From Phallusia mammillata (Eukaryota), in NCBI GenBank assembly GCA_965637545.1, contig OZ281495.1:20026001-20090000 (forward strand): a stretch of DNA of 64,000 nt, given 5' to 3'. A program made the translations under genes and the position numbers. This document shows, piece by piece, positions 35,101-62,660 of this stretch (the stretch's first letter is position 1; every line of letters begins with the position of its first letter). The notes beneath the pieces are model-generated. The model did no database searches. It saw only the letters and a program-made list of their open reading frames with translations, and was not told where the DNA came from.

Positions 35101-36130
35101 TATCTGTTTTACAGCAGCCGAAACGAAGGATGAAAAAGAGAGCCCAGCAGATCCAGAAAATGTGGAGGTAACTTTTCGAAACAAGGTGGCATAAACACTA
35201 AAATACTAACACCTTTCTGTGTAATAGGCTGAAAGCAAAGAGGTCGTTGCAGAAACTGAGACGGCGCCGGTAGATACAGGCGTTATTGCTGAAACAGAAC
35301 AAGTTGAACCAAAAGCGGAAGAACCAGCCTCCGAGTCACAACCCGAAGAACTACAATCCACAGAGCAGCCAGCAGAAGAAGCACCTGTGGAAGAGAAATC
35401 AGCAGATGAACCACCAGCTCCGGGGCAACTAACTGCAGAACCACCAGTTCCAGAGCAACCAGCAGAAAATCCACCAGTTACAGAGCAACCAGAAGAAGAA
35501 CCAACAGTTTCAGAGCAACCAGCAGAAGAACCAACAGTTTCAGAGCAACCAGCAGAAGAACCACCAGTTACAGAGCAACCAGAAGAAGAACCAACAGTTT
35601 CAGAGCAACCAGCAGAAGAACCAACAGTTTCAGAGCAACCAGCAGAAGAACAACCAGTTGATGAGCAGCCAACGGAGGAACCATCAGCGGAGAAACTGTC
35701 ACCGGAAACACAGGCAGAACCCATAACTGAAGCTGCGGTCGAGGAAAGTGCCCCCACTGAAGCACTGGATGCACAAGCACCAGACGAGGTGCAGGTTGAT
35801 CCAGCGACTGGGGCGAATGATACGGCAGAGGCAACAGACGAGAAGACGGCCGAATCTCAAGAAGTGCCAGAAGTTAAGGACGACGTGGATGGTGCAGCGA
35901 CACAAAAAGATGACCCTGCTTCAGAATCACAACCAGAGGAAGAAAAACCATCAACGGAAACTCAAGTGGCAGAAGAAGAATCTACGCCCACAGTCGAAGA
36001 ACAGCATGAAGCGCCAAAGGAAGAACCCAATGACACCGCACCTGAACAACAAACTGAAATAGCAAAAGATGAGACTCAACAAAAACCTGACGGAGAAAAA
36101 GTGGAGCCGGCCCAGGATGCGACGGAATAA
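32103..36130 (+). CDS. Sp17-like protein: RIIa dimerisation/docking domain + IQ motif + very long Glu-rich tail (~1030 aa)
   Basis: Exons 32103-32256, 32322-32492, 32563-32654, 32753-33052, 33219-33275, 33529-34854, 34939-34981, 35115-35167 and 35228-36130 are phase-compatible. The N-terminus MSVRYGAVKLQVPPGFKQLLENLSREVLREQPKNIPRFAAAYFNRLLERRE is an Sp17/ropporin-type D/D domain, and AATLIQASFRGFKIRK is an IQ motif. Confidence 0.85.
35451..35670 (+). repeat. Coding 30-bp tandem repeat (EQPAEEP[T/P]V[S/T])
   Basis: About 7 copies of CAGAGCAACCAGCAGAAGAACCAACAGTTT in the last exon of the Sp17-like gene. Confidence 0.9.
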
Positions 36131-36483
36131 TGCAATGATAGTTCAGTGTTTTTCTTGTTAATAAAAGAGAGTCTATTTTCTAAAATACTTTTTTTAAATT
36201 ATTTATTTGCGTCACCTAAAATTCGTACCACCATTAACTTTTTTCCCACAATAATCTTCAAAGGCACTCAAGTCTCCAAAGTGAAAAGAGGTCGATTGAA
36301 AGAAAAAGAAAATTGCATGATAAATTTTAAGAACACCGAAATTCAACAACAAAAATGGCTCGCAAGTGTTAAGTAACAATAAATTGCACGTTACTCAAAT
36401 ATGATTAAATTAGTCAAGTGCGCGTCATGTAAATACGATTAACACCTAATACAAACACGATGTTTGAAATGAAATCACGATCT

Positions 36484-40085
<3,602 letters not shown>

Positions 40086-40728
40086 TATCAAACTTAAAAA
40101 TGTTATGTTTTATTGTTTCAAATATATCTAGTAAGAATAAAAATAAGCTCACAGTGAAATAAACTGCTGACTAATCTGGCCACTAGTTGCAAATGATAGT
40201 AAAAAAATGTGTGTTGTAATAGGTTTTCACCAAGTTAAAAATTAAGAAAGTTTGTTTGCACAACACAAACAAACCTTGTGAAACACAAACATATTTGAAC
40301 ACAACCACAATCACAGAATATTGTACGAATATAGCAAACAAAAACTTTTAATACAGGCCGAATTCTATGTTGAAAGTAAGCATGTTTGTATTAGTACGTG
40401 TTGACACAAAATTGTTTTGCTTAGTGCAACTGGATTGTGCTACAAAGTCTAACTCTGATTTAACATCTCATGTTTTATTGTGTGATATACCAAATCGAAG
40501 TTGCTCTATAGAGTTTAACCCAATTAAACATGATGCCATTTAAAGTAACAATGATCATAATGAACTCAGGTGTGATTCCCACCTCTGAAAATAACAAAAA
40601 AAGCACAACCAGCAACACACAAGAACACATACACAAATCAAGCTACAATTGCCTTGCTGTTAAGTCACATTAACATGTAAAGAAACATCTTGCAAAAGAA
40701 TTTTGAAATATATAATATAATAAAGTGA

Positions 40729-42002
40729 TCATAATGAATCTCCAACATAAAGCAATGCATCAATAAGATTTCCGCCACAATGTTTTAGTCCACGAATTGC
40801 TTTATTTCTGTCAACATTTAGCTGTTTCACAATTGTGTCAATATCACCAATATGCATTCCTTTTTCAGACTCTTGTGCTTCACCAACTGCCTGAAATACA
40901 TGCACAGCCAACCTAAGTTATTTTGTTTTGATAGACACAGTAAGGATGCATTTACAAGTTAATCAGCAGGAAAAAAACAATAACGATACATGTAAGTTGA
41001 ACTATACTAACAAAGTCAAAATTAACTCACCATAAATTGCCTAATCTTCATTCTGAAGACAATATCAGAAACATTGTCTTCATTTACCACTTTGCCTTTT
41101 GCAATTAGGTTAAGACTATCAAGATGTATAAGAAGCTCCTCAGATATTATGTTTAAAATACACTTGGGATTCAGGAGAGTTTGTGGAATCAAAACACAAT
41201 GCTTTTCATGATTGTGTTTGATGAACAGCTTCACTGGCTGATTCTGGCTTTGCATATTGTTCTTTTTGTCCAAAAAGCTGTCTTTTTCTTTCTTTGTACA
41301 TTTTAGCTTATGAACTGTCCAATCTTTTATTTGGCACGACTTTGAACTAAACATTAAAAGCACAGGAAACCATATTGGGTTACATAAAAAACTATGTCAT
41401 TAAACGCAACTATAAAATATTATTTATTGACGAAAAACTCACCAATAGATGACTGCTTTGCATTGAACGCATCTTTTCATACATCGATCAGTTAAACCAG
41501 TGGTTCCCAACCGACGGTCCGCGGACCGGTGCCGGTCCGCGTGAATATTTTGCCGGTCCGCAAATTATCTTACTTTATGCCAAGCTACTTTTTGAAATGA
41601 AATGATAAGTTGGCCTATTGCAAAGTTTTGGGAAGGGGAAAACTCATTTTATGCTTGTCTGTAAAACTGTGGTAGCTCTCCACCGTTGATCCCGCAAAAT
41701 TGTTTAATAAAGCTTTTGTGACGTTTGTGATTGTTTTGTCATAAACTGCGTGTAGTATTCAACATTTGGGTTGAGTTGATGGCCGTTTGGTTGCAATTTT
41801 TTGTCCTATATACATAGGATATGACTAAATCTTGCATTATGTCGCGCAACGACAATTATGGTGAACAAAAAGCTCACAAACATCTGTTACATTCACCATA
41901 AGCTTTTGTTGCCGGTCCGTGGATTTTTTTTTAATTTTTGCCGGTCCCACGGTGTAGAAAGGTTGGGAACCACTGAGTTAAACCACAAACCGAGGAAGAC
42001 AT
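40729..42002 (-). pseudogene. MYND-UBL-UBA gene, copy A, disrupted by a MITE in coding exon 1
   Basis: Same exons as 50762-51529, but the first MYND Cys is Ser (ATG TCT TCC TCG) and the 41498-41975 MITE sits between the G-L-T and DRCMKRC codons. Confidence 0.8.
41498..41975. mobile_element. hAT MITE, inserted after the duplication (copy A only)
   Basis: TIRs CAGTGGTTCCCAACC / GGTTGGGAACCACTG and TSD AGTTAAAC. The empty site is present in copy B at ~51503-51510. Confidence 0.92.
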
Positions 42003-42104
42003 GCTTTTTGCAAAACAAACTAAGCAATAATTTGAGCATGTATTCTTCATGCAACCACAAAAACCTTTGAGGGGAAACCCCCTCAGTATTTTATCACTTT
42101 GAAA

Positions 42105-42345
42105 CAGGGAGTCGAACCGTAGCTGAACACGAACCTGAAAACCCGTTTGCGCGGTTCAAACCCGACCGTAGGCTACACAACGATTTCCTTGAAAAAAACG
42201 TTCAGGTTTAAGAAAAGTAATTTACGGTTCGGGTTCAAATCGGGTCCGGTTCGTGCCAGGTTCGTGTCCAAATCGGATCCAGATCGGGTTTAATGAATTT
42301 TAAACTGGTTTGCGTGTTCGGGTTCAGTACCGGTTCGACTCCCTG
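42105..42345. mobile_element. hAT-like MITE (CAGGGAGTCGAACCG family) upstream of the MYND-UBL-UBA gene, copy A
   Basis: TIRs CAGGGAGTCGAACCG / CGGTTCGACTCCCTG. It is present in both copies, so it predates the duplication. No TSD was seen. Confidence 0.8.
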
Positions 42346-42886
42346 CATGCTCAGAATTATAAGACGCAAAATGTAATATCAGCATGGGAGAAAACTTCTT
42401 CAATGTTTAGCCTATTATACACAGATATAAACATACATTCTTCGATTGTAGTTAAAAATTGGCTAAATGCACCAGTAAGTTTTAGGTTAAAGTGTGATAA
42501 TTTCACATAATCTTGCTAGCCTTTTGTATTTGTTTTGCTAGTAGCCTACCGTCCGCAACACGTTAGCCGACAAAGTTGTTTACGCGGACAATTCAACTGT
42601 AGGCTACTTTAAAAGCTGTCTGTTTGGCATTGAGCTGTTTCAATCTATAACTAACCAAGACTAGGTTAGGCCTAAGAATTGAAGTTTGTTGGTAAAGCGT
42701 TAAAATCATCATACACAAAACCAAGCACAATTTCAGCCGTGGTCTACGTCATAAAATGCAGTTTGGAGTAGTTTGGATAATGGTAAAATACTTCTGTCAT
42801 TAAATGGTATTGAATAAGAAAACGCGTAGGATTAAACATCGTAATACAATAACCTTCTTTGCTCTATTTACCAAAAATCGGTACAA

Positions 42887-45795
42887 TTAAGCTTTGCTTT
42901 TGATGGCTGTTAATTGCAATTCCTTTCTTTCATTTTTTTGCTTTCTTTTTTTAAAGTATATCTGAGCCCCAAATAAAGTTGCGACAGACAAAGCTAAAAC
43001 ACCCAACTGAATGTAAATCTTAACGTAAACACAAAAGCTCGTGCTCCACCCGCCGTTAGTGGCTATTCCCAAGTTGGTGATGAGGTTTTTGATGCTGAAC
43101 GCGATTCCAAGTTTAGTTTTGAAGAAGACTGCTGTCACTCCTGAAACAACGTAGTAGCAGTTAAAGAAGAGACAAATAGTAAACTGCAGATCGGACATGT
43201 GCACACTGTCTTGACGTGTAGGCTGTAGTGGTGCGAGGCTACAGCACTCCAGTTTGTTGGACTATAACACGCTAAAAAGTCATGCCTCATCAACCCTGTT
43301 TCGTATTACAACTAGTCACAAACCATAACGTAACTGACTCCACAATGACCACAACTGCTTGGGAACCATAATAACGTTGGCATTATTCGAAACAATTTGG
43401 AAATGTACCAAATTTACGTAACGTGGCAACACATTAAGCGTCTAAATCAGTGGTCGGCAACCACCGGTCCGCGGCCCAGTGCCGGTCCGCGGCCCAGTGC
43501 CGGTCCGCGAGGAGTTTGTTAACGGGCCGCGTACATTTTCAGATTAAATGCTTTTTAAATATTTTTCGGGTGTCTCCGGGGCATGGTAAACTATTTTTTC
43601 CGTTTTTGTTGCTGAATATTTGTATTTTTTGAAAGCCGGTCCGTGATTAAATTTCAGGATTAAAACCGGTCCGCAGTACAAAAAAAGTTGCCGACCCCCT
43701 GGTCTAAATCAAAGGGATTTTCACTGCGTTTTGTCATTTTTGTTTTGTTATTATCTTTAGGTAGCTGGAGTAACTTACATTATCAAAGCTACTTAATCTG
43801 AATAAGGAAGAACTTTAAAATGTGTTCTCGATACGAACCTTCACTGACAATAGTAATCACGTTTTCGCCAGTACCATACACCATTCCTAGCAGATACACA
43901 GACCACAGGTTGCTGGTTGTTGGAACCCAAAATAAGCCAAGAAGGTATCCGGTTAAATGTATAATCACCAGTAGTACCAAAAACTTGTTTAAACCGATCC
44001 GAGGCAAAATAAACGAAAAAACTACTGAAGATACGGTGGCACTCAAACGATGGACTGTCATTGCCAAACCAACCTAAACATAAATGTAAATCAATAATCT
44101 AAGCAGACGTTTTTTTGCATTGGCGTGTCTGATTACGCACTCCAAAATTCTTTCACGCATGTATCACGACTTACTTGCTCTACGCCGAGAGTACATGACA
44201 CGTAGGCTCGTGTGTATTCAGTAATACTGTAACCGAATGTCAACCCATAGTAGAAAAATGTTGACATCGCCAGTAAGTGCAATGGCGAGAATATATGACG
44301 GAAAATAGCACATAAATGAGCATAAAAACTGTGCTTTCCAGGTCGCACAGGTTCCTGAGATTGTGCGTTGTCGCCTGAAAATCACAATTCGTAAAACTTA
44401 CTTTAAGGGTTAAAGCAACTAACAACATGAAAAAACTTACTGTTTAACATTTCGTCGTTTTCCTGACGCTCTAATACTTCCACCGAAGACTCCTGGTATG
44501 ATGGTGGATTAGGCAAATAGTAGGCTTGAACACCCATTACGATCAATATTGCAGTAATGAAGACTGCCAACAACAAATTTATTCCAAGAGCACTTGGTTG
44601 ATATTTTTCAAGTTGATCTTCCGTTCCGTTGTAAATATAATTTCCCTGTAATCAAGTATGAACACTTTACAAACACCAAACATGGCGAAACATTAGTAAG
44701 TAAAAAATGCTTACTTGGCAATCATTCGCGCCACAAGTTTGTAACTCTTTGTTTCTCTCGTCTATTGATGTTGCCACAGTGAAATTTTCAAATATGTTTA
44801 TCAATGTTTCATTGTGCATTGTGTTGACAATTTCTTTTTTGAAAGCACGCAGAAAAACAGTGATAACGCTGTTACTTATAGCCTGCAAATTCAACATGGC
44901 GATCATAGATATTTTCATTTGTACTGTGATAATTTTGCAAATAAAAACGTACTGCTCCAAATGCGACCATTGCATAAAACCGTGCAAAACTTCGATGTAC
45001 ATAAAATTCCGCACTCCTTGATGATTGTTGTTGTTGTGATGCAATTTGCGAAGCAGCCCAATATTTTTCACCAAAATACGCCACAAAAACGGACACTGCA
45101 GCCCATGGCGCACTTTCCAAAATGCCATGAATGACAGATACGGTAATTAGAACTCCCCAAGCTGAAAGCACGATCGTCGATTATTATGTATGAAAAACTC
45201 AACAAAACCAATTGTTGTTATACTTGGATAAAAGTTTCCAGCAATGTAAACGACAAATCCAAGTTCGCCCAAAATTAGCGTCCACTTTGCTCCAAAGTAA
45301 TCCACCAAAAATGGAATGATACATAAACAAGAAAATGCTGACGTAACAAAGATGACAAGTACACTGGTTGTTCCTAATCCCTCCTCGACGTTTATGCTGC
45401 TTTCCAGGTTTAAAACTCCTGTGCACATTTTGCGTCAGAAACAGCGTTCTTTCCTCGTGATGAAAACCAATTACGTCAAGGTTAAATTAAATACGAACGT
45501 TGTTTTCTTCACCTACCTTCATAAGCCCCGTTACCCACCATAAAAGTTACATAAACAATCCATGTGAACTTGCTGACATCCTTCTTCATATAGGTAGGAT
45601 CAACGGCTGTCGATAAATAGTGTAATTAAAAGAATATCACTTGCGCAGAAATTTATCTGGCCCAGCCAAACTTTTGTTAAAGCAATTAACTACAGATACA
45701 GATTTATGAAACTAACAGCATGCACAATGACTTCAGGGTTTAGCATGGCGTGTAAGCACAAAAAATAAGGCAAAAAAATATTACTTACTTTTCAT
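42887..45795 (-). CDS. UNC-93-like MFS membrane protein (UNC93A-like), copy A
   Basis: ATG micro-exon 45795-45789, then VDPTYMKKDVSKFTW.., GVLNLESSINVEEGLGTTSVL..GAKWTLILGE..YIAGNFYP, TCGANDC, EYTRAYVSCTLGVEQ and the C-terminal STSFCVYVKIYIQLGVLALS. These are UNC-93 family motifs and the exons are phase-compatible. Confidence 0.85.
43448..43701. mobile_element. hAT MITE in the last intron of UNC-93-like copy A (absent in B)
   Basis: CAGTGGTCGGCAACC / AGTTGCCGACCCCCTG with TSD GTCTAAAT. It is the same family as 5510-5744, and the empty site is at ~53026-53033. Confidence 0.9.
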
Positions 45796-46247: not shown

Positions 46248-46649
46248 CAGTGGTTCCCAAACTTTTTCATATTTTTTTCAAAACGGTCCCTTTGTCATTA
46301 TTTCGAGGGCTCGCGGTCCTTAAGCTTAAATGTGTATTTCATAAAAACGAAAGTTGATTGCAGGATTTTAGCTAGTTATGCAAAATTGCGCTTAACAATA
46401 ATGCAAAGACAGCATTTAACATCACAAACAGGACAAAAACATTACGATTGTGCGCGAACAATTGCATTTTTGATAGTTGTCATTCAACAAAGGCCATTGT
46501 TTAGCAATGGAGACAGTCGGTTTTCAATTCTACTTTGATTTAAACTGATTTAGTGGCACAAACTGACGCCAAATAAGATTATAGAATTACTTCAACCGCT
46601 TCGCGGTCCCCCCAAAATTGCCTCACGGACCCCAGTTTGGGAACCGCTG
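46248..46649. mobile_element. hAT MITE upstream of UNC-93-like copy A (absent in B)
   Basis: CAGTGGTTCCCAAAC / GTTTGGGAACCGCTG with TSD GTCTAGTA. The empty site is at ~63105-63112. Confidence 0.9.
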
Positions 46650-47821
46650 GTCTAGTATGACGTCTGGTACAATCAAACTTAAAGCCTCTATGTTGCTTTC
46701 CGCACCAGAAAATTGCAAACGAACCCTTGAACAGCCCGAGACCAGCGGTCGCCAAACTACACCCCGGCCTGCGAAGGCATTTTATCCGGCCCTCGATTAA
46801 GGTATTTGGTCTTTATACATAATAAAAATATAGCTATACCGTTAAAAGTTAATTTACTGCAAACATAACCGCGCAACAACATACAGCAGTGAGTTCACCT
46901 AATTTCACAGACGCTTAAATATTGTACAATGCCAGTTTATTACATCACACGCAAGACTGCCTTTGTTATTATGCGCGAACATAAGCTTTTCTTTTGTTAA
47001 TTGAGATGGAATAAATGAGTATTGGCATTCGAAGGTCACTGATTTTAATTTGTTTGTCGGTAATAGATGATGAGGACATGCATGTAAAACGAATGTGCGT
47101 TTGTATTTGCACTAGCTCATTGTGTGCGAACGATACAAAATAAGCAGGTAAAACAATGTAAATCGTGACGTCATAAACAGCTAAAGAGTGATCAGCAATC
47201 TGCTCAGTTTAGTTTATGGGTAAAGGTAAAAATCTTAAAGGCACGAGGATACGGGACATTATCAAATAAATCTTTTTTTTTAAACAGTAGTTTGTAAACA
47301 TTGGCTACTTTTCATGAAATACGACCCTGTGATGCGGCCCTCAAATCGAAAAAAAACTGATGGTAATTTTGGCGTGAGCACCTCAGCCTGACGTTCTGGT
47401 TGTGACAGAACCAGTACAAAAAAGAACTGTCGAAAAGTGGAACCGGCCCAGGATGCGACGGAATAATGCAATGATAGTTCACAGTGTTTTTCTTGTTAAT
47501 AAAAGAGAGTCTATTTTCTAAAATACTTTTTTTTAATTATTTATTTGCGTCACCTAAAATTCGTACCACCATTAACTTTTTTCCCACAATAATCTTCAAA
47601 GGCACTCAAGTCTCCAAAGTGAAAAGAGGTCGATTGAAAGAAAAAGAAAATTGCATGATAAATTTTAAGAACACTGAAATTCAACAACAAAAATGGCTCG
47701 CAAGTGTTAAGTAACAATAAATTGCACGTTACTCAAATATGATTAAATTAGTCAAGTGCGCGTCATGTAAATACGATTAACACCTAATACAAACACGATG
47801 TTTGAAATGAAATCACGATCT

Positions 47822-50439
<2,618 letters not shown>

Positions 50440-50761
50440 ATTGCTGTGGTTAGTGCAACTGGATTGTGCCACAAAGTCTAACTCTGATTTAACATCTCAT
50501 GTTTTATTGTGTGACATACTAAATTGACGTTGCTCTATGGAGTTTAACCCAATTAAACATAATGCCATTTAAAGTAAAAATGATCATGACAAACTCAGGT
50601 ATGATTCCCACCTCTGAAAATAAAAAAATAAAACCAACCAGCAACACACAAGAACACATACAAGAATCAAGCTACAATTGCCTTGCTGTTAAATAAGTCA
50701 CATTAACATGTAAAGAAACATCTTGCAAAAGAATTTTGAAACATATAATATAATAAAGTGA

Positions 50762-51529
50762 TCATAATGAATCTCCAACATAAAGCAATGCATCAATAAG
50801 ATTTCCGCCACAATGTTTTAGTCCACGAATTGCTTTATTTCTGTCAACATTTAGCTGTTCCACAATTGTGTCAATATCACCAATATGCATTCCTTTTTCA
50901 GACTCTTGTGCTTCACCAACTGCCTGAAATACATGCACAGCCAACCTAAGTTTTTTTGTTTTGATAGACACAGTAAGGATGCATTTACAAGTTAATCAGC
51001 AGGAAAAAAACAATAACGATACATGTAAGTTGAACTATACTAACAAAGTCAAAATTAACTCACCATAAATTGCCTTATCTTCATTCTGAAGACAATATCA
51101 GAAACATTGTCTTCATTTACCACTTTGCCTTTTGCAATTAGGTTAAGACTATCAAGAGGTATAAGAAGCTCCTCAGATATTATGTTTAAAATACACTTGG
51201 GATTCAGGAGAGTTTGTGGAATCAAAACACAATGCTTTTCATGATTGTGTTTGATGAACAGCTTCACTGGCAGATTCTGGCTTTGCAAAAAGCTGTCTTT
51301 TTCTTTCTTTGTACATTTTAGCTTATGAACTGTCCAATCTTTTATTTGGCACGACTTTGAACTAAACATTAAAAGCACAGGAAACCATTGGGTTACATAA
51401 AAAACTATGTCATTAAATGCAACTATAAAATATTATTTATTGACGAAAAACTCACCAATAGATGACTGCTTTGCATTGAACGCATCTTTTCATACATCGA
51501 TCTGTTAAACCACAAACCGAGCAAGACAT
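50762..51529 (-). CDS. Small MYND zinc finger - ubiquitin-like - UBA-like protein (~177 aa), intact copy B
   Basis: Exons 51529-51456, 51361-51064 and 50923-50762. They give MSCSVCGLTDRCMKRCVQCKAVIYCSKSCQIKDWTVHKLKC (complete MYND), then VKLFIKHNHEKH..LNLIAKGKVV..FMAVGE (UBL-like), then DIDTIVEQLNVDRNKAIRGLKHCGGNLIDALL (UBA-like, NAC-alpha/HYPK type). Confidence 0.8.
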
Positions 51530-51714
51530 GCTTATTGCAAAACAAACTAAGCAAAAATTTGAGCATGTATTCTTCATGCAACCACAAAAACCTTTGAGGG
51601 GAAACCCCCAATTTAAGATTTTCCAGAAATGGCCCTTTTACCAATTTTAATAGCTTGTGCACACGCTACATTGCTGTTTTTTAACGTTCTTTTCAGTATT
51701 TTATTACTTTGAAA

Positions 51715-51956
51715 CAGGGAGTCGAACCGTAGCAGAACACGAACCTGAAAACCCGTTTGCGCGGTTCAAACCCGACCGTAGGCTACACAACGATTTCCTT
51801 AAAAAAACTTTCAGGTTTAAAAAAATGTAATTTACGGTTCGGGTTCAAATCGGGTCCGGTTCGTGTCCAAATCGGATCCAGATCATGTTTAATGAATCAA
51901 ACCGTTTAAACTGGTTTGCGTGTTCGGGTTCAGTAGCCTACCGGTTCGACTCCCTG
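51715..51956. mobile_element. hAT-like MITE, copy B counterpart of 42105-42345
   Basis: Same TIRs CAGGGAGTCGAACCG / CGGTTCGACTCCCTG at the equivalent position. Confidence 0.8.
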
Positions 51957-52476
51957 CATGCTCAGAATTATAAGACGCAAAATGTAATATTAGCCTATTA
52001 CACACAGATATAAACATACATTCTTCGATTTTTGTTAAAAATTGGCTAAATGCACCAGTAAGTTTTAGGCTAAAGTGTGATAATTTCACATAATCTTGCT
52101 AGCCTTTTGTATTTGTTTTGCTAGTACATACCGTCCGCAACACGTTAGCCGACAAAGTTGTTGCCAATTACGCTGACAATTCAACTGTAGGCCACTTTAA
52201 AAGCTGTCTGTTTGGCATTGAGCTGTTTCAATCTATAACTAACCAAGACTATAAGTTATAAGAATTGAAGTTTGTTGGTAAAGCGTTAAAATCATCATTC
52301 ACAAAACCAAGCACAATTTCAGCCGTGGTCTACGTCTACGTCATAAAATACAATTTGGAGTAGTTTGGATAATAGTAAAATACTTCTGTCATTAAATGGT
52401 ATTGAGTAAGAAAACGCGTAGGATTAAATCGTAATACAATAATCTTCTTTGCTCTATTTACCAAAAATCGGTACAA

Positions 52477-55400
52477 TTAGGTTTTGCTTTTGATGGCTGT
52501 TAATGGCAATTCCTTTTGTTCATTTTTTTGCTCTCTTTTTTTAAAACATATCTGAGCCCCAAATAAAGTTGCGACAGACAAAGCTAAAACACCCAACTGA
52601 ATGTAAATCTTAACGTAAACACAAAAGCTCGTGCTCCACCCGCCGTTAGTGGCTATTCCCAAGTTGGTGATGAGGTTTTTGATGCTAAACGCGATTCCAA
52701 GTTTAGTTTTGAAGAAGACTGCTGTCACTCCTGAAACAACGTAGTAGCAGTTAACGAAGAGACAAATATTAAACTGCAGATCGGACATGTGAACACTGTC
52801 TTGACGTGTAGGCTGTAGTGTAGCGAGGCGACAGCACTCCAGTTTGTTGGACTAACACGCCAAAAAGCCTTGCCTCATCACCCTTGTTTCATATTACAAC
52901 TAATCACAAACCACAACGTAACTGGCTCCACAATGACCACAACTGCTTGGGAACCATAATAGCGTTGGCATGATTGGAAACAATTTTGAAATGTACCAAA
53001 TTTACGTAACGTGGTAACACAAGCGTCTAAATCAAAGGGATTTTCACTGCGTTTTGTCATTTTTGTTTTGTTATTATCTTTAGGTAGCTGGAGTAACTTA
53101 CATTATTAAAGCTACTTAATCTGAATAAGGAAGAACTTTAAAATGTGTTCTCGATACGAACCTTCACTGACAATAGTAATCATGTTTTGGCCAGTTCCAT
53201 ACACCATTCCTAGCAGATACACAGACCACAGGTTGCTGGTTGTTGGAACCCAAAATAAGCCAAGAAGGTATCCGGCTAAATGTATAATCACCAGTAGTAC
53301 CAAAAACTTGTTTAAACCGATCCGAGGCAAAATAAACGAAAAAACTACTGAAGATACGGTGGCACTCAAACGATGGACTGTCATTGCCAAACCAACCTAA
53401 ACATAAATGTTAATCAATAATCTAAGCAGATGTTTTTTTGCATTGGCGTGTCTGATTACGCACCCCAAAATTTTTTCACGCATGTATCACGACTTACTTG
53501 CTCTACGCCGAGAGTACATGACACGTAGGCTCGTGTGTATTCAGTAATACTGTAACCGAATGTCAACCCATGATAGAAAAATGTTAACATCGCCAGTAAG
53601 TGCAATGGCGAGAATATATGACGGAAAATAGCAGATAGATGTGCATAATAACTGTGCTTTCCAGGTCGCACAGGTTCCTGAGATTGTGCGTTGTCGCCTG
53701 AAAAAAAAAATTTCGTAAAACTTACTTCAAGGGTTAAAGCAACTAACAACATGAAAAAACTTACTGTTTAACATTTCGTCGTTTTCCTGACGCTCTAATA
53801 CTTCCACCGAAGACTCCTGGTATGATGGTGGATTAGGCAAATAGTAGGCTTGAACACCCATTACGATCAATATTGCAGTAATGAAGACTGCCAACAACAA
53901 ATTTATTCCAAGAGCACTTGGTTGATATTTTTCAAGTTGATCTTCCGTTCCGTTGTAAATATAATTTCCCTGTAATCAAGTATGAACACTTTACAAACAC
54001 CAAACATGGCGAAACATTAGTAAGTAAAAAATGCTTACTTGGCAATCATTCGCGCCACAAGTTTGTAACTCTTTGTTTCTCTCGTCTATTGATGTTGCCA
54101 CAGTGAAATTTTCAAATATGTTTATCAATGTTTCATTGTGCATTGTGTTGACAATTTCTTTTTTGAAAGCACGCAGAAAAACAGTGATAACGCTGTTACT
54201 TATAGCCTGCAAATTCAACATGGCGATCATAGATATTTTCATTTGTACTGTGATAATTTTGCAAATAAAAACGTACTGCTCCAAATGCGACCATTGCATA
54301 AAACCGTGCAAAACTTCGATGTACATAAAATTCCGCACTTGTTGATGATTGTTGTTGTTGTGATGCAATTTGCGAAGCAGCCCAATATTTTTCACCGAAA
54401 TACGCCACAAAAACGGACACTGCAGCCCATGGCGCACTCTCCAAAATGCCATGAATGACAGATACGGCAATGAGAACTCCCCAAGCTGAATATATGTTCG
54501 TAGATCTCTATGTATGAAAAGCTCAAAAAAACAATTGTTGTTATACTTGGATAAAAGTTTCCAGCAATGTAAACGACAAATCCAAGTTCTCCCAAAATCA
54601 GCGTCCACTTTGCTCCAAAGTAATCCACCAAAAATGGAATGATACATAAACAAGAAAATGCTGACGTAACAAAGATGACAAGTACACTGGTTGTTCCTAA
54701 TCCCTCCTCGACGTTTATGCTGCTTTCCAGGTTTAAAACTCCTGTGTACATTTTGCTTTAGAAACATCGTTCTTCCCTCGTTATGAAAACCAATTACGTC
54801 AAAGTTAAATTAAATACGAACGTTGTTTTCTTCACCTACCTTCATAAGCCCCGTTACCCACCATAAAAGTTACATAAACAATCCATGTAAACTTGCTGAC
54901 ATCCTTGTTCGTATAGGTAGGATCAACGGCTGTCGATAAATAGTGTTGTAAGAATTTATCTGCGCTCTTATTAGTTGTTTATGGGACCTCATGTTATACG
55001 CTTCATTGCGCATTGCACAACAAACGCTTGATTGTTGCGTCACTCCTGCGCATGCGCGAACTGTAGCGTGGTTGATATCATTTCCAAGTTAGTGTGTCAG
55101 GGTTTGTCTGTTTTTGCCCGTGTCGATTGGTTAGCGATTCGAATTCATGTTGTAATGCTGTCGTAGTTGTGTAAGCTAACTTGTCTAGATATTATTGCAG
55201 CTGTGAAATATAGTGGCGAACTGTAAAGATTAATTGGATTGTATTTAACTGAAATTCGATTGGCGATCTTGTGATTCTGTGCATTGCTGTCGTGGTAAGC
55301 TTTCTTGCATATGTTTCTAACTTAAAGTGTTCGAATTTAATCTAACTTTGAATGTAAATATTACAGTTGTGACATCCGATCGCCTGTAAACTGCACAGTC

Positions 55401-58400
55401 GTGTTGACTGCAAGTACATATTGCTGGTGAGTGAATCGTATGTGCTGTGACGTCATAATGCCTTATTCATGTGTGATATGTTATTTCAGCTTTGCCACTC
55501 ACTGAGTTACCTCTGTGGGCCATTTCTCACAGTTAAAAAACTGCATGGCTACGTGACTGACTTTTCTCGTATTCGCCGATTAAAGCATTTCATTTGAGAG
55601 TGTGCTGTCGGTGTTTTGGTGAAGTACACGGGGAGTAGTTACGTACATGCGGTAATTACGGAGATTGCAGAGGTGACCTGTTACGCCGTCCGAAGAAGCT
55701 GGCCACTTTTCCGAAAAGACTGCGTTACATCGTTTTTTAACTGTGATTGTCGCAATGTCTGCCGACAAGTCAAAAATTGTGTCCGCCTTGAAGGCGCTGC
55801 AAAATAGTTATTTGCGTGCCGAAAACCTAATGATTAAACCTTAAGGTGCAATTCCACTAAAGGAATTTCTACCTATGCTTGATTCGGATTTCAAAGTCGT
55901 CATGGACTTGTGTGACGAAATGTCAGATTCGGATACGCTACCCGAAACAGCTTGTCGTAAAGCCGATTGCCGTTGGGAAAAGGAAGAATTTGACGAAAGG
56001 GTGCAGCAATGGTTTGCAACTCTGGAAAGAGGAAAATCTCCAACGCCAGAACCGAGTCACCATGTTCCCGAGGATAGATTGTCTGTTCGCTCCAGTCGAA
56101 ATTCAACTACGAGTTCGATTCGAAGTGAGATTCGCCGAAGTCGCGTGAAGGTAAAAATTGCGCGACTCGCTCATGATCAAGAAGTAGCAAACCAGCGACG
56201 AGCTTTTGAAGAAGTTGAAAGACTGCGCCGTGAAGCGGAAGACAAGGTACGTCGCACACGGGAAGCTGCCCGGCGTGCTGCAGAGGAAGAAATTGTAAAG
56301 GCCCAGCGTGCTGCTGAAGAAGAGATTGTAAAGGCCCAGCGTGCTGCTGAGGAAGAGATTGCAAACGCCCAGCGAGCTGCGGAGGAAGAGGTCGCAAGGA
56401 TGAAAATGGAGGCTGATCGTATCGAAGAGGATGCACGAAAAAATACTCAAGATAGGCGCTGTCAACTTCAACTCGCCGAGGTTGAAGCTCAAGCTTGGGA
56501 TGAAGAGTCCACGTGTGAATCTCCTCAAAATTCGCAGGTGCACCCGATGAAGACGGGCAGCATGCAGGGACTAATGCCTGCAACAGAAAATAAGCAGTAC
56601 ACGGCGGCGTCGCCCCAAATATTTCCTAAATTACCACACGACAATAAGCACTCACTAGAACGCGATAAGCCGTTTGTAGGTATTTCAAAACCATCCCACG
56701 AACAGCCCTTACCATTTGCTAGAGAGCTTGCGCTATCGAGACCTGTTGATCATGATTACCCTGAAGTGGGTGAACGCTTTTTACCCAGACCTGTAGTGAA
56801 GAAATTTGATGGAGACCCCATGAACTACTGGTCGTTCGTGCGCCAGTTTGACGTGTATATTGCAAAAAAGTCACGGAGTGATGATATGCGTTTGTTGTTT
56901 CTGCAACAACACTGCGAACCGCACATCTGCGAAAAATTGGAACGTTTTAACGCCAAGGATCCCGTTGAAGGATATAAGTTGGCATGGCAAACTTTACACG
57001 AAGAGTACGGCCAACCGCATGTTATAGCACAACGATGCGAGCAACATCTCAAGGCGTCTCCAGTCGTTGAGACCCACGATCCGGAAGGACTGATGAAACT
57101 ATCTGTGTTACTAGATAAATGTTACACGGCCTTGCATGATATAAGATATGCGTCTAGTGTAGACCGTCGCAAGAATACTTCCCGTGACCCTGCGTGATGA
57201 ATGGATTGCGAGGGCCACCGACATAGAGAAGAAGACAGGGAGAAGAGCGGACCTTGCTGCGTTGACTAAGTTTATTGGTGAAAAGAGTCAACAAGCGAAT
57301 TCCATTTTTGGGAAGGCTCTATTTCCCCCAAAGGAAGCATCCAAGGCTGCGAATCGACATACAAAGGTTACAGCTCACAATACCGTCGCTTCGGAACCCT
57401 CGTCTTCTGTAAGATGCGTATTGTGCGCCTACCCACATGAAGTGTACGACTGTCCTGCCTTTAAGGAAAAGACATACTTAGAGCGGCGAAGGGTTGTTCG
57501 TACAAAAGGACTGTGTTTTAGATGTCTTAAGGGCGATCACATTGCCAGTGATTGCAACGCAACAAGTACCTGCAAAGTTGAGGGCTGTCCTGGAACGTCC
57601 CATCACCATCTCTTACACGATCCGGCCTTTAAAGCTAAGCCGCATTTTATCGACAACGGAAACCCTGCTTGTACTGCGATTCAGACGCAGGAGTACAGTG
57701 CCAGTGCGAATGCTGCGAGCGTATACTTGAATGTGGTTCCAGTTGTGGTGCGACATGGAAACACAGCAATCGCGACATATGCCTTTCTCGACCAAGGGTC
57801 CACTACCACATTTTGTGAACGTAAATTAATGGATAAATTAGGAGCCTGTGGCAAACCTAAACAAATACTGTTGAATACTCTAACGACGCCACGTCATTTG
57901 AACACTGTTGCTATATCCGTTGCAGTTGAACCGCTGGGTGGCGGAGAAGCAATTGATCTTCCCGAGGTGGTTGTGGTCAACAAAATTCCTGTGATGCCAA
58001 ACGTTGTGCCCGACACACGGACGTTAAGGGCGCATCGTTCTTTGCAAGACTTGACGTTATGCAATGTGCCAGGGGGATCGGTTACGTTATTGATTGGAGC
58101 AATATTCCTGTCGCACATCGAGTAAAGTCTGTCCGCCCGGGGAATGAATATTGCCCGGATGCAGTGAGGACGCCTTTAGGTTGGTCTTTACTTGGACAAA
58201 CCTTCGAATCAAAAAATCCCTCTGCCCATGTCCATTTCGCATCTGCTGTTGAAAATGCTCACGCCATGTTCTTGAGCGATGAAGGAGATTTTTTGCCTAC
58301 TGACGGAGAAGATGGGGACGTGTTGGGTACTCCATTTTCGACTGAAGATAGAAGAACATGTCGGATGATGAAGGATTCTGTTAAATTTGTTGATGGACAC

Positions 58401-61400: not shown

Positions 61401-62660
61401 AAGAATCGTCGCCGTCCATCCTGATGAGCATGGAGTCGTACGAAACGTCGAGGTTCGATCCAAGGGAAACTGTATTCGAAGGCCTATACACAAGTTGTGT
61501 TTAATTGTTCCTACTGATGAGAAAGTTCATGCGCAAGCGCATGACGACCCAGTGGCTATTGCTTCACCTGTAAACGAATTGTAAATGACATTTTGCGGTT
61601 GTGGTGTCTACTCGACGAGCGCGTCAAAATATTTTTGTGTTGCAAAATTGAACGTGAATGTGAACCACTTGTCAATTTTGGGGGGGAGTGTAAGAATTTA
61701 TCTGCGCTCTTATTAGTTGTTTATGGGACCTCATGTTATACGCTTCATTGCGCATTGCACAACAAACGCTTGATTGTTGCGTCACTCATGCGCATGCGCG
61801 AACTGTAGCGTGGTTGATATCATTTCCAAGTTAGTGTGTCAGGGTTTGTCTGTTTTTGCCCGTGTCGATTGGTTAGCGATTCGTATTCATGTTGTAATGC
61901 TGTCGTAGTTGTGTAAGCTAACTTGTCTAGATATATTATTGCAGCTGTGAAATATAGTGGCGAACTGTAAAGATTAATTGGATTGTATTTAACTGAAATT
62001 CAATTGGCGATCTTGTGATTCTGTGCATTGCTGTCGTGGTAAGCTTTCTTGCATATGTTTCTAACTTAAAGTGTTCGAATTTAATCTAACTTTGAATGTA
62101 AATATTACAGTTGTGACATCCGATCGCCTGTAAACTGCACAGTCGTGTTGACTGCAAGTACATATTGCTGGTGAGTGAATCGTATGTGCTGTGACGTCAT
62201 AATGCCTTATTCATGTGTGATATGTTATTTCAGTTTTGCCACTCACTGAGTTACCTCTGTGGGCCATTTCTCACAGTTAAAAAACTGCATGGCTACGTGA
62301 CTGACTTTTCTCGTATTCGCCGATTAAAGCATTTCATTTGAGAGTGTGCTGTCGGTGTTTTGGTGAAGTACACGGGGAGTAGTTACGTACATGCGGTAAT
62401 TACGGAGATTGCAGAGGTGACCTGTTACGCCGTCCGAAGAAGCTGCCACTTTTCCGAAAAGACTGCGTTACAAGTGTAATTAAAAGAATATCACTTGCGC
62501 AGAAATTTATCTGGCCCAACCAAACTTTTGTTAAAGCAGCTGTCGAAATTAACTACAGATACAGATTTATGAAACTATAACAGCATGCACAATGACTTTA
62601 GGGTTCAGCATGGCGTGTAAGCACAAAAAGTAAGGCAAACAAATATTACTTACTTTTCAT
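52477..62660 (-). CDS. UNC-93-like MFS protein, copy B: exons appear open, but intron 1 carries a 7.5-kb LTR element
   Basis: The coding exons match copy A with substitutions and no stop or frameshift was noticed. The ATG micro-exon (62660-62654) is separated from exon 2 (~54929) by the BEL insertion. Expression is unknown. Confidence 0.6.
54947..55729 (+). repeat. 5' LTR (783 bp)
   Basis: Differs from the 3' LTR at about 4 substitutions and 2 small indels by manual comparison. Confidence 0.95.
55755..61584 (+). pseudogene. Broken gag-pol polyprotein of the BEL/Pao element
   Basis: Split over ORFs 55875-57197, 57184-58125, 58059-59297, 59291-59563 and 59560-61584 by frameshifts and deletions. 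Confidence 0.88.
61689..62472 (+). repeat. 3' LTR (784 bp)
   Basis: Follows the polypurine tract, ends GCGTTACA and is followed by the TSD AGTGT. Confidence 0.95.

What the first reader, a model, noticed from the sequence alone, without database searches (positions are those of the whole stretch)
50762..51529. Compact MYND-finger + ubiquitin-like + UBA-like protein: a candidate new ubiquitin shuttle/adaptor
Seen: three exons give ~177 aa with a complete MYND finger (C-S-V-C, C-V-Q-C, YCSKSCQ..DW..HK..C), a ubiquitin-fold-like middle (LNLIAKGKVV..FMAVGE) and a C-terminal three-helix UBA-like segment. Known: a UBL plus a UBA is the layout of proteasome shuttles (Rad23, Dsk2/ubiquilin, Ddi1), and MYND fingers bind PxLxP-type motifs. 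I do not recognise a characterised protein with all three domains and no catalytic domain. Inference: it may recruit PxLxP-bearing clients and deliver them to ubiquitin/proteasome machinery. It is also the copy that survived after the duplication.
Basis: partly seen in the sequence, partly recalled or inferred. Interest (0 to 1): 0.7.

Follow-up and report, generated by a model that had tools for sequence, protein, structure and literature searches.

The report
MYND–UBL–UBA adaptor gene, ZF(MYND)-8
This is a real, expressed sea-squirt gene for a small protein built from a zinc finger, a ubiquitin-like domain and a ubiquitin-associated-type domain; it is already catalogued as ZF(MYND)-8 and conserved across many marine animals, but its function has not been studied in any paper I could find.

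Summary
On the minus strand, three exons (51529-51456, 51361-51064, 50923-50762) encode 177 aa. RNA-derived contigs from four independent studies join them exactly at GT..AG introns.

The domains are:
- a complete MYND finger (Pfam 39 bits);
- a divergent ubiquitin-like domain, supported by an AlphaFold model with pLDDT 87, fold matches to ubiquilin, BAG6 and Dsk2, and a family profile that hits the ubiquilin-2 UBL at E 4e-5;
- a C-terminal three-helix UBA of the NAC-alpha/HYPK subtype (Pfam UBA_HYPK; NACA UBA Z 10.1, rmsd 0.6 Å).

The gene is not new. It is 99% identical to Phallusia mammillata "ZF(MYND)-8" and orthologous to Ciona ZF(MYND)-8. The same architecture occurs in cnidarians, molluscs, brachiopods, nemerteans, echinoderms, hemichordates, tunicates and sturgeons. 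I found no functional literature on it.

The shuttle idea is plausible but untested. The documented partners of this UBA subtype are Naa15, SRP54 and NEDD8, not polyubiquitin.

The tandem paralogue at 40.7-42.0 kb is broken by a 478-bp MITE in exon 1, so this is the intact copy in this assembly.

Verdict: an ordinary annotated gene that belongs to an interesting, uncharacterised adaptor family. Earlier notes of this scan held nothing on it.

The parts
51456..51529 (-). Exon 1 coding part (Met1 to the first two bases of codon 25). It holds the first half of the MYND finger (C3, C6, C16, C19).
   Evidence: Sequence; zf-MYND profile positions 1-22; splice joint 51361>51456 in 4 runs.
51530..51608 (-). 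5' UTR as far as the contigs reach. It contains an in-frame upstream ATG at 51577 that would add 16 non-conserved residues; the database model P0001 uses it.
   Evidence: ORF 51452-51577; contigs reach 51605-51608; P0001 N-terminus; residues 1-14 of the model have pLDDT <50; orthologues start at the downstream Met.
51362..51455 (-). Intron 1 (94 nt, GT..AG). It splits the MYND finger between Tyr24 and Cys25.
   Evidence: Genomic-ORF relatives from other species start at the same point (SS[KR]xCQ), which suggests a conserved intron position.
51064..51361 (-). Exon 2: second half of the MYND finger (to 51313), variable linker (residues 42-55), and most of the ubiquitin-like domain (from about 51267).
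50924..51063 (-). Intron 2 (140 nt, GT..AG, phase 0).
50762..50923 (-). Exon 3 coding part: last UBL strand (AVGE, 50923-50912), acidic connector, NAC-alpha/HYPK-type UBA (three helices, about 50884-50771), and stop TGA at 50764-50762.
   Evidence: Pfam UBA_HYPK 30.4 bits, above the cut-off of 27; NACA UBA by sequence at E 2e-4; Z 10.1, rmsd 0.6 Å over 45 residues.
50352..50761 (-). 3' UTR as far as the contigs reach. It runs across the deletion junction at 50439/50440 into a remnant exon of the truncated GH1 copy.
   Evidence: Contig pieces 50352-50922 and 50412-50922; duplication map.
40732..42002 (-). Tandem paralogue (copy 1) of the same gene. Exon 1 is split after codon 9 by a 478-bp MITE (41498-41975, perfect 15-bp terminal inverted repeats, 8-bp target duplication GTTTAACT). 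It also has a Cys3>Ser change, a 6-aa insertion in the linker, and P>H and E>K changes.
   Evidence: tblastn, blastn, sequence, TIR search.

Best explanation
The locus is the intact, transcribed copy of the ascidian gene ZF(MYND)-8. It is a member of an old metazoan family of small non-catalytic proteins. Each member has an N-terminal MYND zinc finger, a variable disordered linker, a ubiquilin-like UBL and, about ten residues later, a NAC-alpha/HYPK-type UBA. Shown here: the gene structure, its expression, the three folds and the family conservation. Inferred: it works as an adaptor. The MYND finger would hold a partner through a short proline-rich (PxLxP-type) motif. The UBL, whose Ile44-equivalent strand (IPLxKLKLIHKGK in the family) is the most conserved part, would dock onto a UBL/ubiquitin receptor such as those of the proteasome. 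The UBA would bind a ubiquitin-family protein or another helical partner. My estimates are about 0.95 for identity and architecture, about 0.7 for 'non-catalytic adaptor' in general, and about 0.3 for the proteasome-shuttle version specifically.
For: - Splicing and expression: four studies.
- Identity: exon 2 matches P0001 at 99% identity, E 2e-52; P0001 is P. mammillata ZF(MYND)-8.
- Family: 28 relatives at E<=1e-3 by exhaustive phmmer, plus 20 proteins at E<=1e-3 by profile search, some already among the 28. All full-length members have the same layout.
- Pfam over 35 members: UBA_HYPK in 34, zf-MYND in 29, ubiquitin (PF00240) in 18, best E 1.8e-6.
- AlphaFold with a 35-sequence alignment: pLDDT 87.4; beta-beta-alpha-beta-beta-(alpha)-beta at residues 79-148 and three helices at 160-197.
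- Foldseek: ubiquitin, ubiquilin-3, BAG1, BAG6 and Dsk2 UBLs, TM by target 0.67-0.77.
- VIA-align: NACA UBA Z 10.1; UBLs Z 8-9.3.
- UBL profile against PDB: ubiquilin-2 at 4.2e-5, then ubiquilin-1 and -3, BAG1, BAG6, Rad23 and Dsk2. The alignment maps ubiquitin I44/G47/K48 onto conserved I/G/K.
- Conservation peaks on that strand (0.70) and in the UBA (0.60), against 0.21 in the linker.
- No catalytic domain is detected.
Against: - No binding or functional data exist for any family member in the literature I could search.
- The UBA is not a canonical PF00627 UBA (1 of 35 members matches). From my own knowledge of canonical UBAs, the MGF/Y loop position reads L-N-V here. The documented partners of the NAC/HYPK subtype are Naa15, SRP54 and NEDD8.
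- The ubiquitin Leu8 equivalent is Asn, so the classical hydrophobic patch is only partly kept.
- pLDDT is high through the short UBL-UBA connector. This may mean the two domains form one rigid unit rather than two free arms.
- No client of the MYND finger is known.
Confidence: 0.45

Rival explanations
1. It is a co-translational factor in the manner of NAC-alpha or HYPK. The UBA docks on Naa15 (NatA) or on the SRP54 NG domain at the ribosomal tunnel exit. The MYND finger and UBL bring or regulate a further partner there.
For: The C-terminal 45 residues, including the acidic lead-in (E-x-G-[LVM]-x3-DI), are homologous to the NACA C-terminus: E 2e-4 and Z 10.1, rmsd 0.6 Å, 31% identity. UBA_HYPK matches in 34 of 35 members. 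NAC-alpha UBA binds Naa15 and SRP54 through an exposed hydrophobic patch, and HYPK UBA binds Naa15 (PMC11372111, PMC12716357). Lingula relatives are auto-annotated 'NAC subunit alpha-like'.
Against: There is no NAC beta-barrel domain: no Pfam NAC hit, and the middle fold is a beta-grasp with a helix. NAC-alpha and HYPK use a 'contact helix' before the UBA together with the UBA to bind Naa15. That helix is absent here: only about 10 residues and no helix lie between strand 144-148 and helix 160. No ribosome-binding motif was identified.
Confidence: 0.2
2. It is a receptor or scaffold of the p62/NBR1/HYPK kind. The UBL-UBA pair acts as one module that recognises a ubiquitin-family mark (ubiquitin or NEDD8) or self-associates, and the zinc finger selects cargo. 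An alternative version is a closed, auto-inhibited UBL-UBA pair.
For: Structural matches include the NBR1 and p67phox/p40phox PB1 domains at Z 9.0-9.3, tied with the UBLs. p62 and NBR1 also combine a beta-grasp domain, a zinc finger and a C-terminal UBA (my own knowledge). HYPK UBA is reported to bind NEDD8 in aggrephagy (bioRxiv 10.1101/780379, abstract). The connector has high pLDDT. The Atlas models of this protein and of a mollusc cluster align over 121 residues spanning UBL+UBA (residues 75-198).
Against: Sequence profiles pick ubiquitin and ubiquilin UBLs; no PB1 is among the 60 best PDB hits shown. No acidic OPCA-like cluster was noticed by eye in the conserved consensus; this was not formally tested. 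No conserved LC3-interacting motif is seen in the variable linker.
Confidence: 0.15
3. It is a transcriptional co-regulator. The gene was catalogued among ascidian zinc-finger genes, and MYND fingers of ETO, BS69 and DEAF1 recruit co-repressors.
For: The name ZF(MYND)-8 comes from zinc-finger gene catalogues. Eight of 35 members also match the ZMYND11/ZMYND8-type MYND model.
Against: No DNA-binding or chromatin-reader domain was detected. The rest of the protein is UBL + UBA. MYND is a protein-binding finger, not a DNA-binding one (established knowledge).
Confidence: 0.08
4. It is not a functional gene: chance ORFs or a decaying duplicate.
For: It lies in a recent tandem duplication whose other gene copies are decaying.
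Against: Spliced transcripts are seen in four studies. The frame is intact and all zinc ligands are present. The family is conserved across phyla.
Confidence: 0.02

Closest known systems
Ciona intestinalis zinc finger protein (MYND)-8 (NP_001123342.1 / Q1RL57) and P. mammillata ZF(MYND)-8 (A0A6F9DUR9)
   Same: Same gene family and same MYND-UBL-UBA layout. Exon 2 is 99% identical to the Phallusia entry. The Phallusia entry P0001 is 41-44% identical to the Ciona protein over 91% of its length.
   Different: The window allele lacks a 6-aa linker insertion present in the database entry. That entry starts 16 codons further upstream. The database entries carry a name only; I found no described function.
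Ubiquilin/Dsk2 and Rad23 (UBL-UBA proteasome shuttles)
   Same: A UBL plus a C-terminal UBA and no catalytic domain. By profile the UBL is closest to the ubiquilin-2, -1 and -3 UBLs, and also matches the Rad23 and Dsk2 UBLs. The Ile44, Gly47 and Lys48 equivalents are conserved.
   Different: The UBL is internal, not N-terminal. There are no STI1 repeats or XPC-binding domain. The UBA is the NAC/HYPK subtype rather than a canonical UBA. The UBL-UBA spacer is only about 10 residues. A MYND finger is added. Proteasome and polyubiquitin binding are untested.
NAC-alpha (NACA) and HYPK
   Same: The C-terminal UBA with its acidic lead-in is homologous.
   Different: There is no NAC barrel domain and no contact helix. 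No heterodimer partner or ribosome anchor is evident.
p62/SQSTM1 and NBR1
   Same: Overall logic: a beta-grasp domain, a zinc finger and a C-terminal UBA in a non-catalytic receptor. The NBR1 PB1 domain is a structural match at Z 9.3.
   Different: The domain order differs and the finger is a different type (ZZ versus MYND). Sequence profiles assign the beta-grasp domain to the ubiquitin family, not PB1. No LIR motif is seen.
MYND-finger proteins (ETO/RUNX1T1, ZMYND11/BS69, PHD2/EGLN1, USP19, SMYD)
   Same: A complete C4-C2HC MYND finger with the conserved CQ..DW..H..C core.
   Different: In those proteins the finger accompanies catalytic or chromatin domains. Here it heads a UBL-UBA module.

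Membership tests
zf-MYND (PF01753) | Eight zinc ligands with C-x2-C ... C-x2-C ... C-x3-C ... H-x3-C spacing, and a profile match above the gathering score | tested here: met
   C3, C6, C16, C19, C25, C29, H37 and C41 in the spliced product. P0001, identical over this region, scores 39 bits against a cut-off of 22.7 over profile positions 1-39/39. The two exon halves match profile positions 1-22 and 24-39.
Ubiquitin family / UBL (PF00240) | Beta-grasp fold (beta-beta-alpha-beta-beta-beta) with sequence-profile similarity to ubiquitin | tested here: met
   The window protein alone gives no Pfam ubiquitin hit. Eighteen of 35 family members do, best E 1.8e-6. The family profile hits the ubiquilin-2 UBL at 4.2e-5 and many other UBLs. 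The AF2 secondary structure fits, and Foldseek/VIA matches are TM 0.67-0.77 and Z 8-9.3.
Ubiquitin-like modifiers (conjugatable) | C-terminal Gly-Gly exposed or exposable for conjugation | tested here: not met
   The UBL ends in an invariant G-E and runs straight on into the UBA. There is no di-glycine.
UBA_HYPK (PF19026), the NAC-alpha/HYPK-type UBA | Three-helix bundle matching the HYPK/NAC profile above the gathering score | tested here: met
   Exon 3 alone scores 30.4 bits against a cut-off of 27. It matches in 34 of 35 family members. NACA is the best PDB sequence hit at E 2e-4. Structure match: Z 10.1, rmsd 0.6 Å, 45 residues. In the full-length P0001 the score is 26.9, just under the cut-off.
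Canonical UBA (PF00627) | Profile match; MGF/MGY loop between helices 1 and 2 that contacts ubiquitin | tested here: not met
   E 0.13, 12.6 bits against a cut-off of 22.4. One of 35 members matches. The loop reads L-N-V-D. The role of the loop in ubiquitin binding comes from my own knowledge.
NAC alpha subunit | NAC beta-barrel dimerisation domain (PF01849) upstream of the UBA | tested here: not met
   No NAC hit at E<=10 on exon 2 or at E<=0.01 across the family. NACA is not among the PDB hits of exon 2. The middle domain is a beta-grasp with a 12-residue helix.
UBL-UBA proteasome shuttle factors (Rad23, Dsk2/ubiquilin, Ddi1) | The UBL binds proteasomal receptors (Rpn1, Rpn10, Rpn13) | not testable with these tools
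   Indirect evidence only: the closest UBLs by profile are ubiquilins, BAG1, BAG6, Rad23 and Dsk2, and the Ile44-equivalent strand is conserved.
UBL-UBA proteasome shuttle factors (Rad23, Dsk2/ubiquilin, Ddi1) | The UBA binds polyubiquitin | not testable with these tools
   The UBA subtype differs from that of the shuttles. The published partners of this subtype are Naa15, SRP54 and NEDD8 (PMC11372111, PMC12716357, bioRxiv 10.1101/780379).
ZF(MYND)-8 orthologue group | Same three-domain layout with full-length alignable sequence in other tunicates and other phyla | tested here: met
   Ciona intestinalis and C. savignyi, Clavelina, Styela, Glandiceps, Strongylocentrotus, Lingula, several molluscs, Tubulanus, Exaiptasia/Actinia and Acipenser/Huso. 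Identity to the first sequence is 26-46%.
PB1 domain | Profile similarity to PB1; OPCA acidic motif or basic cluster for front-to-back pairing | tested here: inconclusive
   The structural Z of 9.0-9.3 is tied with the UBLs. No PB1 appears among the 60 best sequence-profile hits shown or among the Pfam hits. The OPCA motif was not formally tested; no acidic cluster was noticed by eye in the conserved consensus.

The most novel reading that the evidence does not exclude
ZF(MYND)-8 proteins are a so far unstudied class of proteostasis adaptor. They would combine a client-selecting MYND finger with a fused ubiquilin-like UBL and a NAC/HYPK-type UBA. This could link proline-motif clients either to the proteasome or to the nascent-chain machinery (NatA/SRP) that NAC-alpha and HYPK engage. 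The family runs from cnidarians to basal vertebrates. It did not appear from mammals, teleosts, insects, nematodes or fungi in my searches, which would explain why it has not been studied.
Probability: 0.2. Interest if true: 0.65.

Novelty: new variant of a known kind. Interest (0 to 1): 0.4.

Why it matters
UBL-UBA adaptors (Rad23, ubiquilins, Ddi1) and the NAC/HYPK UBA proteins are central to protein quality control. This family joins elements of both to a peptide-motif-binding zinc finger. It is conserved over a very wide span of animals, yet it carries only automatic names. It did not appear from the standard model organisms, so its function has not been examined. Ascidian embryos (Phallusia, Ciona) are tractable for mRNA injection, knock-down and proteomics, so the question can be tested directly. 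For this window, the practical result is a verified annotation and a clear example of reciprocal decay after a tandem duplication.

Tried and rejected
- **NAC domain in the middle region.** The end of the domain ('FMAVGEAQ') resembles the end of the NAC barrel of NACA as I recall it. I rejected this: there are no Pfam or PDB sequence hits, and the AF2 model is a beta-grasp with a helix.
- **Word-index protein searches with exon 2.** Both the 99-aa and the 107-aa queries found nothing. The first excluded 177-aa proteins by its length window. The second also missed the 199-aa database entry, which lies outside its window. These blanks therefore said nothing; the exhaustive phmmer search found the family.
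- **Single-sequence AlphaFold of exon 2.** The model was poor (pLDDT 51) and I used it only for the beta-beta-alpha pattern. The alignment-based model replaced it.
- **Fusion with the neighbouring GH1 gene.** I considered whether the three exons are 5' exons of GH1, or nested in it. This is rejected: there is an in-frame stop, and the mRNA contigs are separate. The GH1 contigs laid here come from the other copy; they show 6-nt and 31-nt indels relative to this copy.
- **Literature searches.** Four searches found no paper on the family: MYND + Ciona, MYND + UBL + UBA, MYND + HYPK, and MYND + ascidian.
- **Earlier notes of this scan.** Nothing was found near the place or under these words.
- **Full-length spliced protein.** I did not type the spliced 177-aa sequence into any tool. 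Full-length analyses used P0001, the database protein. It is identical to the window product except for the 16-aa N-terminal extension, a 6-aa linker insertion and one linker residue.

Full report
**Observation**

The minus strand between 51529 and 50762 carries three exons: 51529-51456, 51361-51064 and 50923-50762. They are separated by introns of 94 and 140 nt with GT..AG ends. The spliced frame is open for 177 codons and ends in TGA at 50764-50762.

I laid Logan contigs of four runs from four different studies on window 49000-54000. Each run has a contig of about 860-1050 nt. The contigs of three runs cover 50352/50412/50506-50922, 51063-51361 and 51456-51592/51605/51608. The X1 contig covers 50440-50922 and 51063-51361 and crosses the same second joint. 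All of them skip precisely the two predicted introns, with ends CT..AC on the plus strand. The runs are only guessed to be RNA, but precise intron removal shows that the contigs derive from spliced RNA. The transcript is separate from that of the glycosyl-hydrolase-1 (GH1) gene downstream. An in-frame ATG at 51577 lies inside these contigs and would add 16 residues. Orthologues start at the Met that corresponds to 51529, so the true start codon is open.

**What the protein is**

By exon, Pfam finds the two halves of a MYND finger in exons 1 and 2. It finds a UBA_HYPK domain in exon 3 at 30.4 bits, above the curated cut-off of 27. The best solved-structure match of exon 3 by sequence is the C-terminal UBA of human NAC-alpha, at E 2e-4 over 43 residues.

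The word-index searches with exon 2 were blank. That was due to their length windows: the exhaustive phmmer search of 1.84 billion representatives found 28 relatives at E<=1e-3.

The best hit is P0001, at 99% identity and E 2e-52. It is "ZF(MYND)-8 zinc finger protein" of Phallusia mammillata (CAB3266879.1, A0A6F9DUR9), which identifies the genome. The others include:
- Ciona intestinalis zinc finger protein (MYND)-8 (NP_001123342.1, Q1RL57);
- Clavelina and Styela (tunicates);
- the hemichordate Glandiceps;
- Strongylocentrotus (sea urchin);
- Lingula (brachiopod), auto-named "NAC subunit alpha-like";
- several molluscs;
- the nemertean Tubulanus;
- the cnidarians Exaiptasia and Actinia;
- sturgeons (Acipenser, Huso).

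No mammal, teleost, arthropod, nematode or fungus appeared. That is absence of evidence only. All full-length members align from end to end in the same order: MYND, a variable low-complexity linker, a conserved domain of about 75 residues, and the UBA.

**The middle domain**

I first suspected a NAC barrel, because the last strand of the domain resembles the end of the NAC domain. That is not supported. Across 35 family members Pfam finds UBA_HYPK in 34, zf-MYND in 29 and the ubiquitin family (PF00240) in 18, with a best E of 1.8e-6, and no NAC hit.

AlphaFold2 with the 35-sequence alignment gives mean pLDDT 87.4 for P0001. The model shows:
- a MYND finger at residues 17-57;
- a disordered stretch at 63-73;
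- a beta-beta-alpha-beta-beta-(alpha)-beta unit at 79-148;
- three helices at 160-197.

Foldseek's best matches are ubiquitin and the UBLs of ubiquilin-3, BAG1, BAG6, Dsk2 and ubiquilin-1, with TM by target of 0.67-0.77. VIA-align gives the NACA UBA at Z 10.1 (rmsd 0.6 Å, 45 residues, 31% identity). For residues 74-150 it gives a set of tied beta-grasp domains at Z 8-9.8: the doublecortin C-terminal domain, the NBR1 PB1 domain, the BAG6 UBL, UFM1, Dsk2 and ubiquilin.

Sequence breaks this tie. A profile of the middle domain alone hits the ubiquilin-2 UBL at E 4.2e-5 in the PDB, followed by ubiquilin-1 and -3, BAG1, BAG6, Rad23, Dsk2 and UBL4A. No PB1 is among the 60 best hits shown. The printed alignment maps ubiquitin Ile44, Gly47 and Lys48 onto conserved I, G and K. 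These are window residues I100, G103 and K104, within the family motif IPLxKLKLIHKGK. Leu8 maps onto Asn. That strand is the most conserved part of the whole protein (0.70 mean top-residue frequency, against 0.21 for the linker). The UBL ends in an invariant Gly-Glu, not Gly-Gly, so it is a built-in UBL and not a modifier.

**How it probably works**

Shown: this is a small protein with three interaction modules and no catalytic domain, expressed and conserved across phyla.

Inferred: it is an adaptor. From established knowledge, MYND fingers bind short proline-rich motifs. The conserved CQ..DW..H..C core, including the tryptophan, is present.

The UBA is the weak point of that idea. It is the NAC-alpha/HYPK subtype and not a canonical UBA (PF00627 matches 1 of 35 members). 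The papers I read report other partners for this subtype:
- NAC-alpha UBA docks on Naa15 of NatA and on the SRP54 NG domain (PMC11372111, PMC12716357).
- HYPK UBA docks on Naa15 (PMC11372111).
- HYPK UBA binds NEDD8 (bioRxiv 10.1101/780379, abstract).

A co-translational role is therefore a real rival. Against it, the family lacks the NAC barrel. It also lacks the "contact helix" that NAC-alpha and HYPK use together with the UBA on Naa15: only about ten residues, without a helix, separate the last UBL strand from the first UBA helix. The high pLDDT across that connector suggests that UBL and UBA may form one rigid unit, which allows a third reading: a closed module or a p62/NBR1-like module. 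I put the generic adaptor reading at about 0.7 and the proteasome-shuttle version at about 0.3.

**The duplication**

A unit of about 8-9.5 kb is tandemly duplicated: 36097-45623 matches 47433-54946 at 90-99% identity. It carries the GH1 gene, this gene and an UNC-93-like transporter gene.

In copy 1, exon 1 of the MYND gene is split after codon 9 by a 478-bp element (41498-41975). The element has perfect 15-bp terminal inverted repeats and an 8-bp target duplication. The first zinc ligand is also changed to Ser. Copy 2 (this finding) is intact. However, copy 2 of GH1 lacks the equivalent of 39649-40410 of copy 1, where a further upstream GH1 ORF lies in copy 1, and it carries frame-breaking indels. 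The two copies have therefore decayed reciprocally.

The database cDNA P0001 mixes features of both copies: the 6-aa linker insertion and one linker residue of copy 1, and the other residues of copy 2. One contig in run X1 joins a copy-1-like 3' UTR to a copy-2-like exon 2. Either further haplotypes exist or that contig is chimeric.

**Comparison and novelty**

The gene is already annotated and named, so it is not a discovery as a gene. Its three domains belong to known families, and each membership was tested and met. What appears undescribed is the architecture and its function. I found no paper on it in four full-text searches, and database names are automatic ("MYND-type domain-containing protein", "uncharacterized protein"). 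The ESM Atlas likewise holds it only as a cluster of "putative MYND-type domain-containing protein". I file it as a new variant of a known kind (UBL-UBA adaptors), with moderate interest.

**Limits**

I did not type the spliced 177-aa sequence into any tool. All full-length analyses used P0001, which is identical to the window product except for a 16-aa N-terminal extension, a 6-aa linker insertion and one linker residue. I could not read model coordinates, so the UBL-UBA contact surface is not described. The mapping of the ubiquitin Val70 equivalent rests on strand-pattern reasoning only.

Noticed in passing
window 36097-45623 and 47433-54946: Tandem segmental duplication (90-99% identity) carrying a GH1 glycosidase gene, the ZF(MYND)-8 gene and an UNC-93-like MFS gene. 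Decay is reciprocal: the MYND gene is broken in copy 1, and GH1 is 5'-truncated and frame-broken in copy 2.
   Followed up: partly
window 41498-41975: A 478-bp non-coding element with perfect 15-bp terminal inverted repeats (CAGTGGTTCCCAACC) and an 8-bp target duplication (GTTTAACT), which looks like a hAT-type MITE. It is inserted in exon 1 of the paralogue. A one-mismatch copy of the terminus lies at 46248-46262.
   Followed up: partly
window 50439/50440 (compare 39649-40410): Copy 2 lacks about 760 bp that copy 1 has between GH1 and the MYND gene, including at least one upstream GH1 ORF/exon (39788-39991). As a result the 3' UTR of the MYND mRNA runs into a remnant GH1 exon (50322-50439).
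   Followed up: partly
window 50440-50922, run X1 contig: One 1046-nt contig has 22 substitutions and a 4-nt gap in the 3' UTR and continues into copy-1-like sequence, yet it matches copy 2 perfectly in exon 2. This is either another haplotype or a chimeric assembly. The database cDNA (P0001) is also a mosaic of copy-1 and copy-2 features.
   Followed up: no
window 51577: An in-frame upstream ATG inside the transcript would add 16 hydrophobic, non-conserved residues. Whether it is used, or removed by trans-splicing, is unknown.
   Followed up: no
window 55875-58125 (+): Two long overlapping ORFs (440 and 313 aa). The second has a weak, below-cut-off match to a retroviral-type CCHC zinc knuckle (zf-CCHC_5, 22.9 bits against a cut-off of 27), so this is probably a retroelement gag region. 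54947-55729 is repeated at 61689-62472 (99%).
   Followed up: no
window 35387-36130 (+): A 247-aa ORF made of Pro/Glu-rich decapeptide-like repeats (PAEEPTVSEQ type). Its only Pfam match is weak and extensin-like.
   Followed up: no
P0002-P0005, P0007, P0013 and P0021 (relatives from other species): ORF-called genomic fragments of relatives begin at the same point inside the MYND finger (SS[KR]xCQ), which suggests that the position of intron 1 is conserved across phyla. Some run on through the UBA without a second intron.
   Followed up: no
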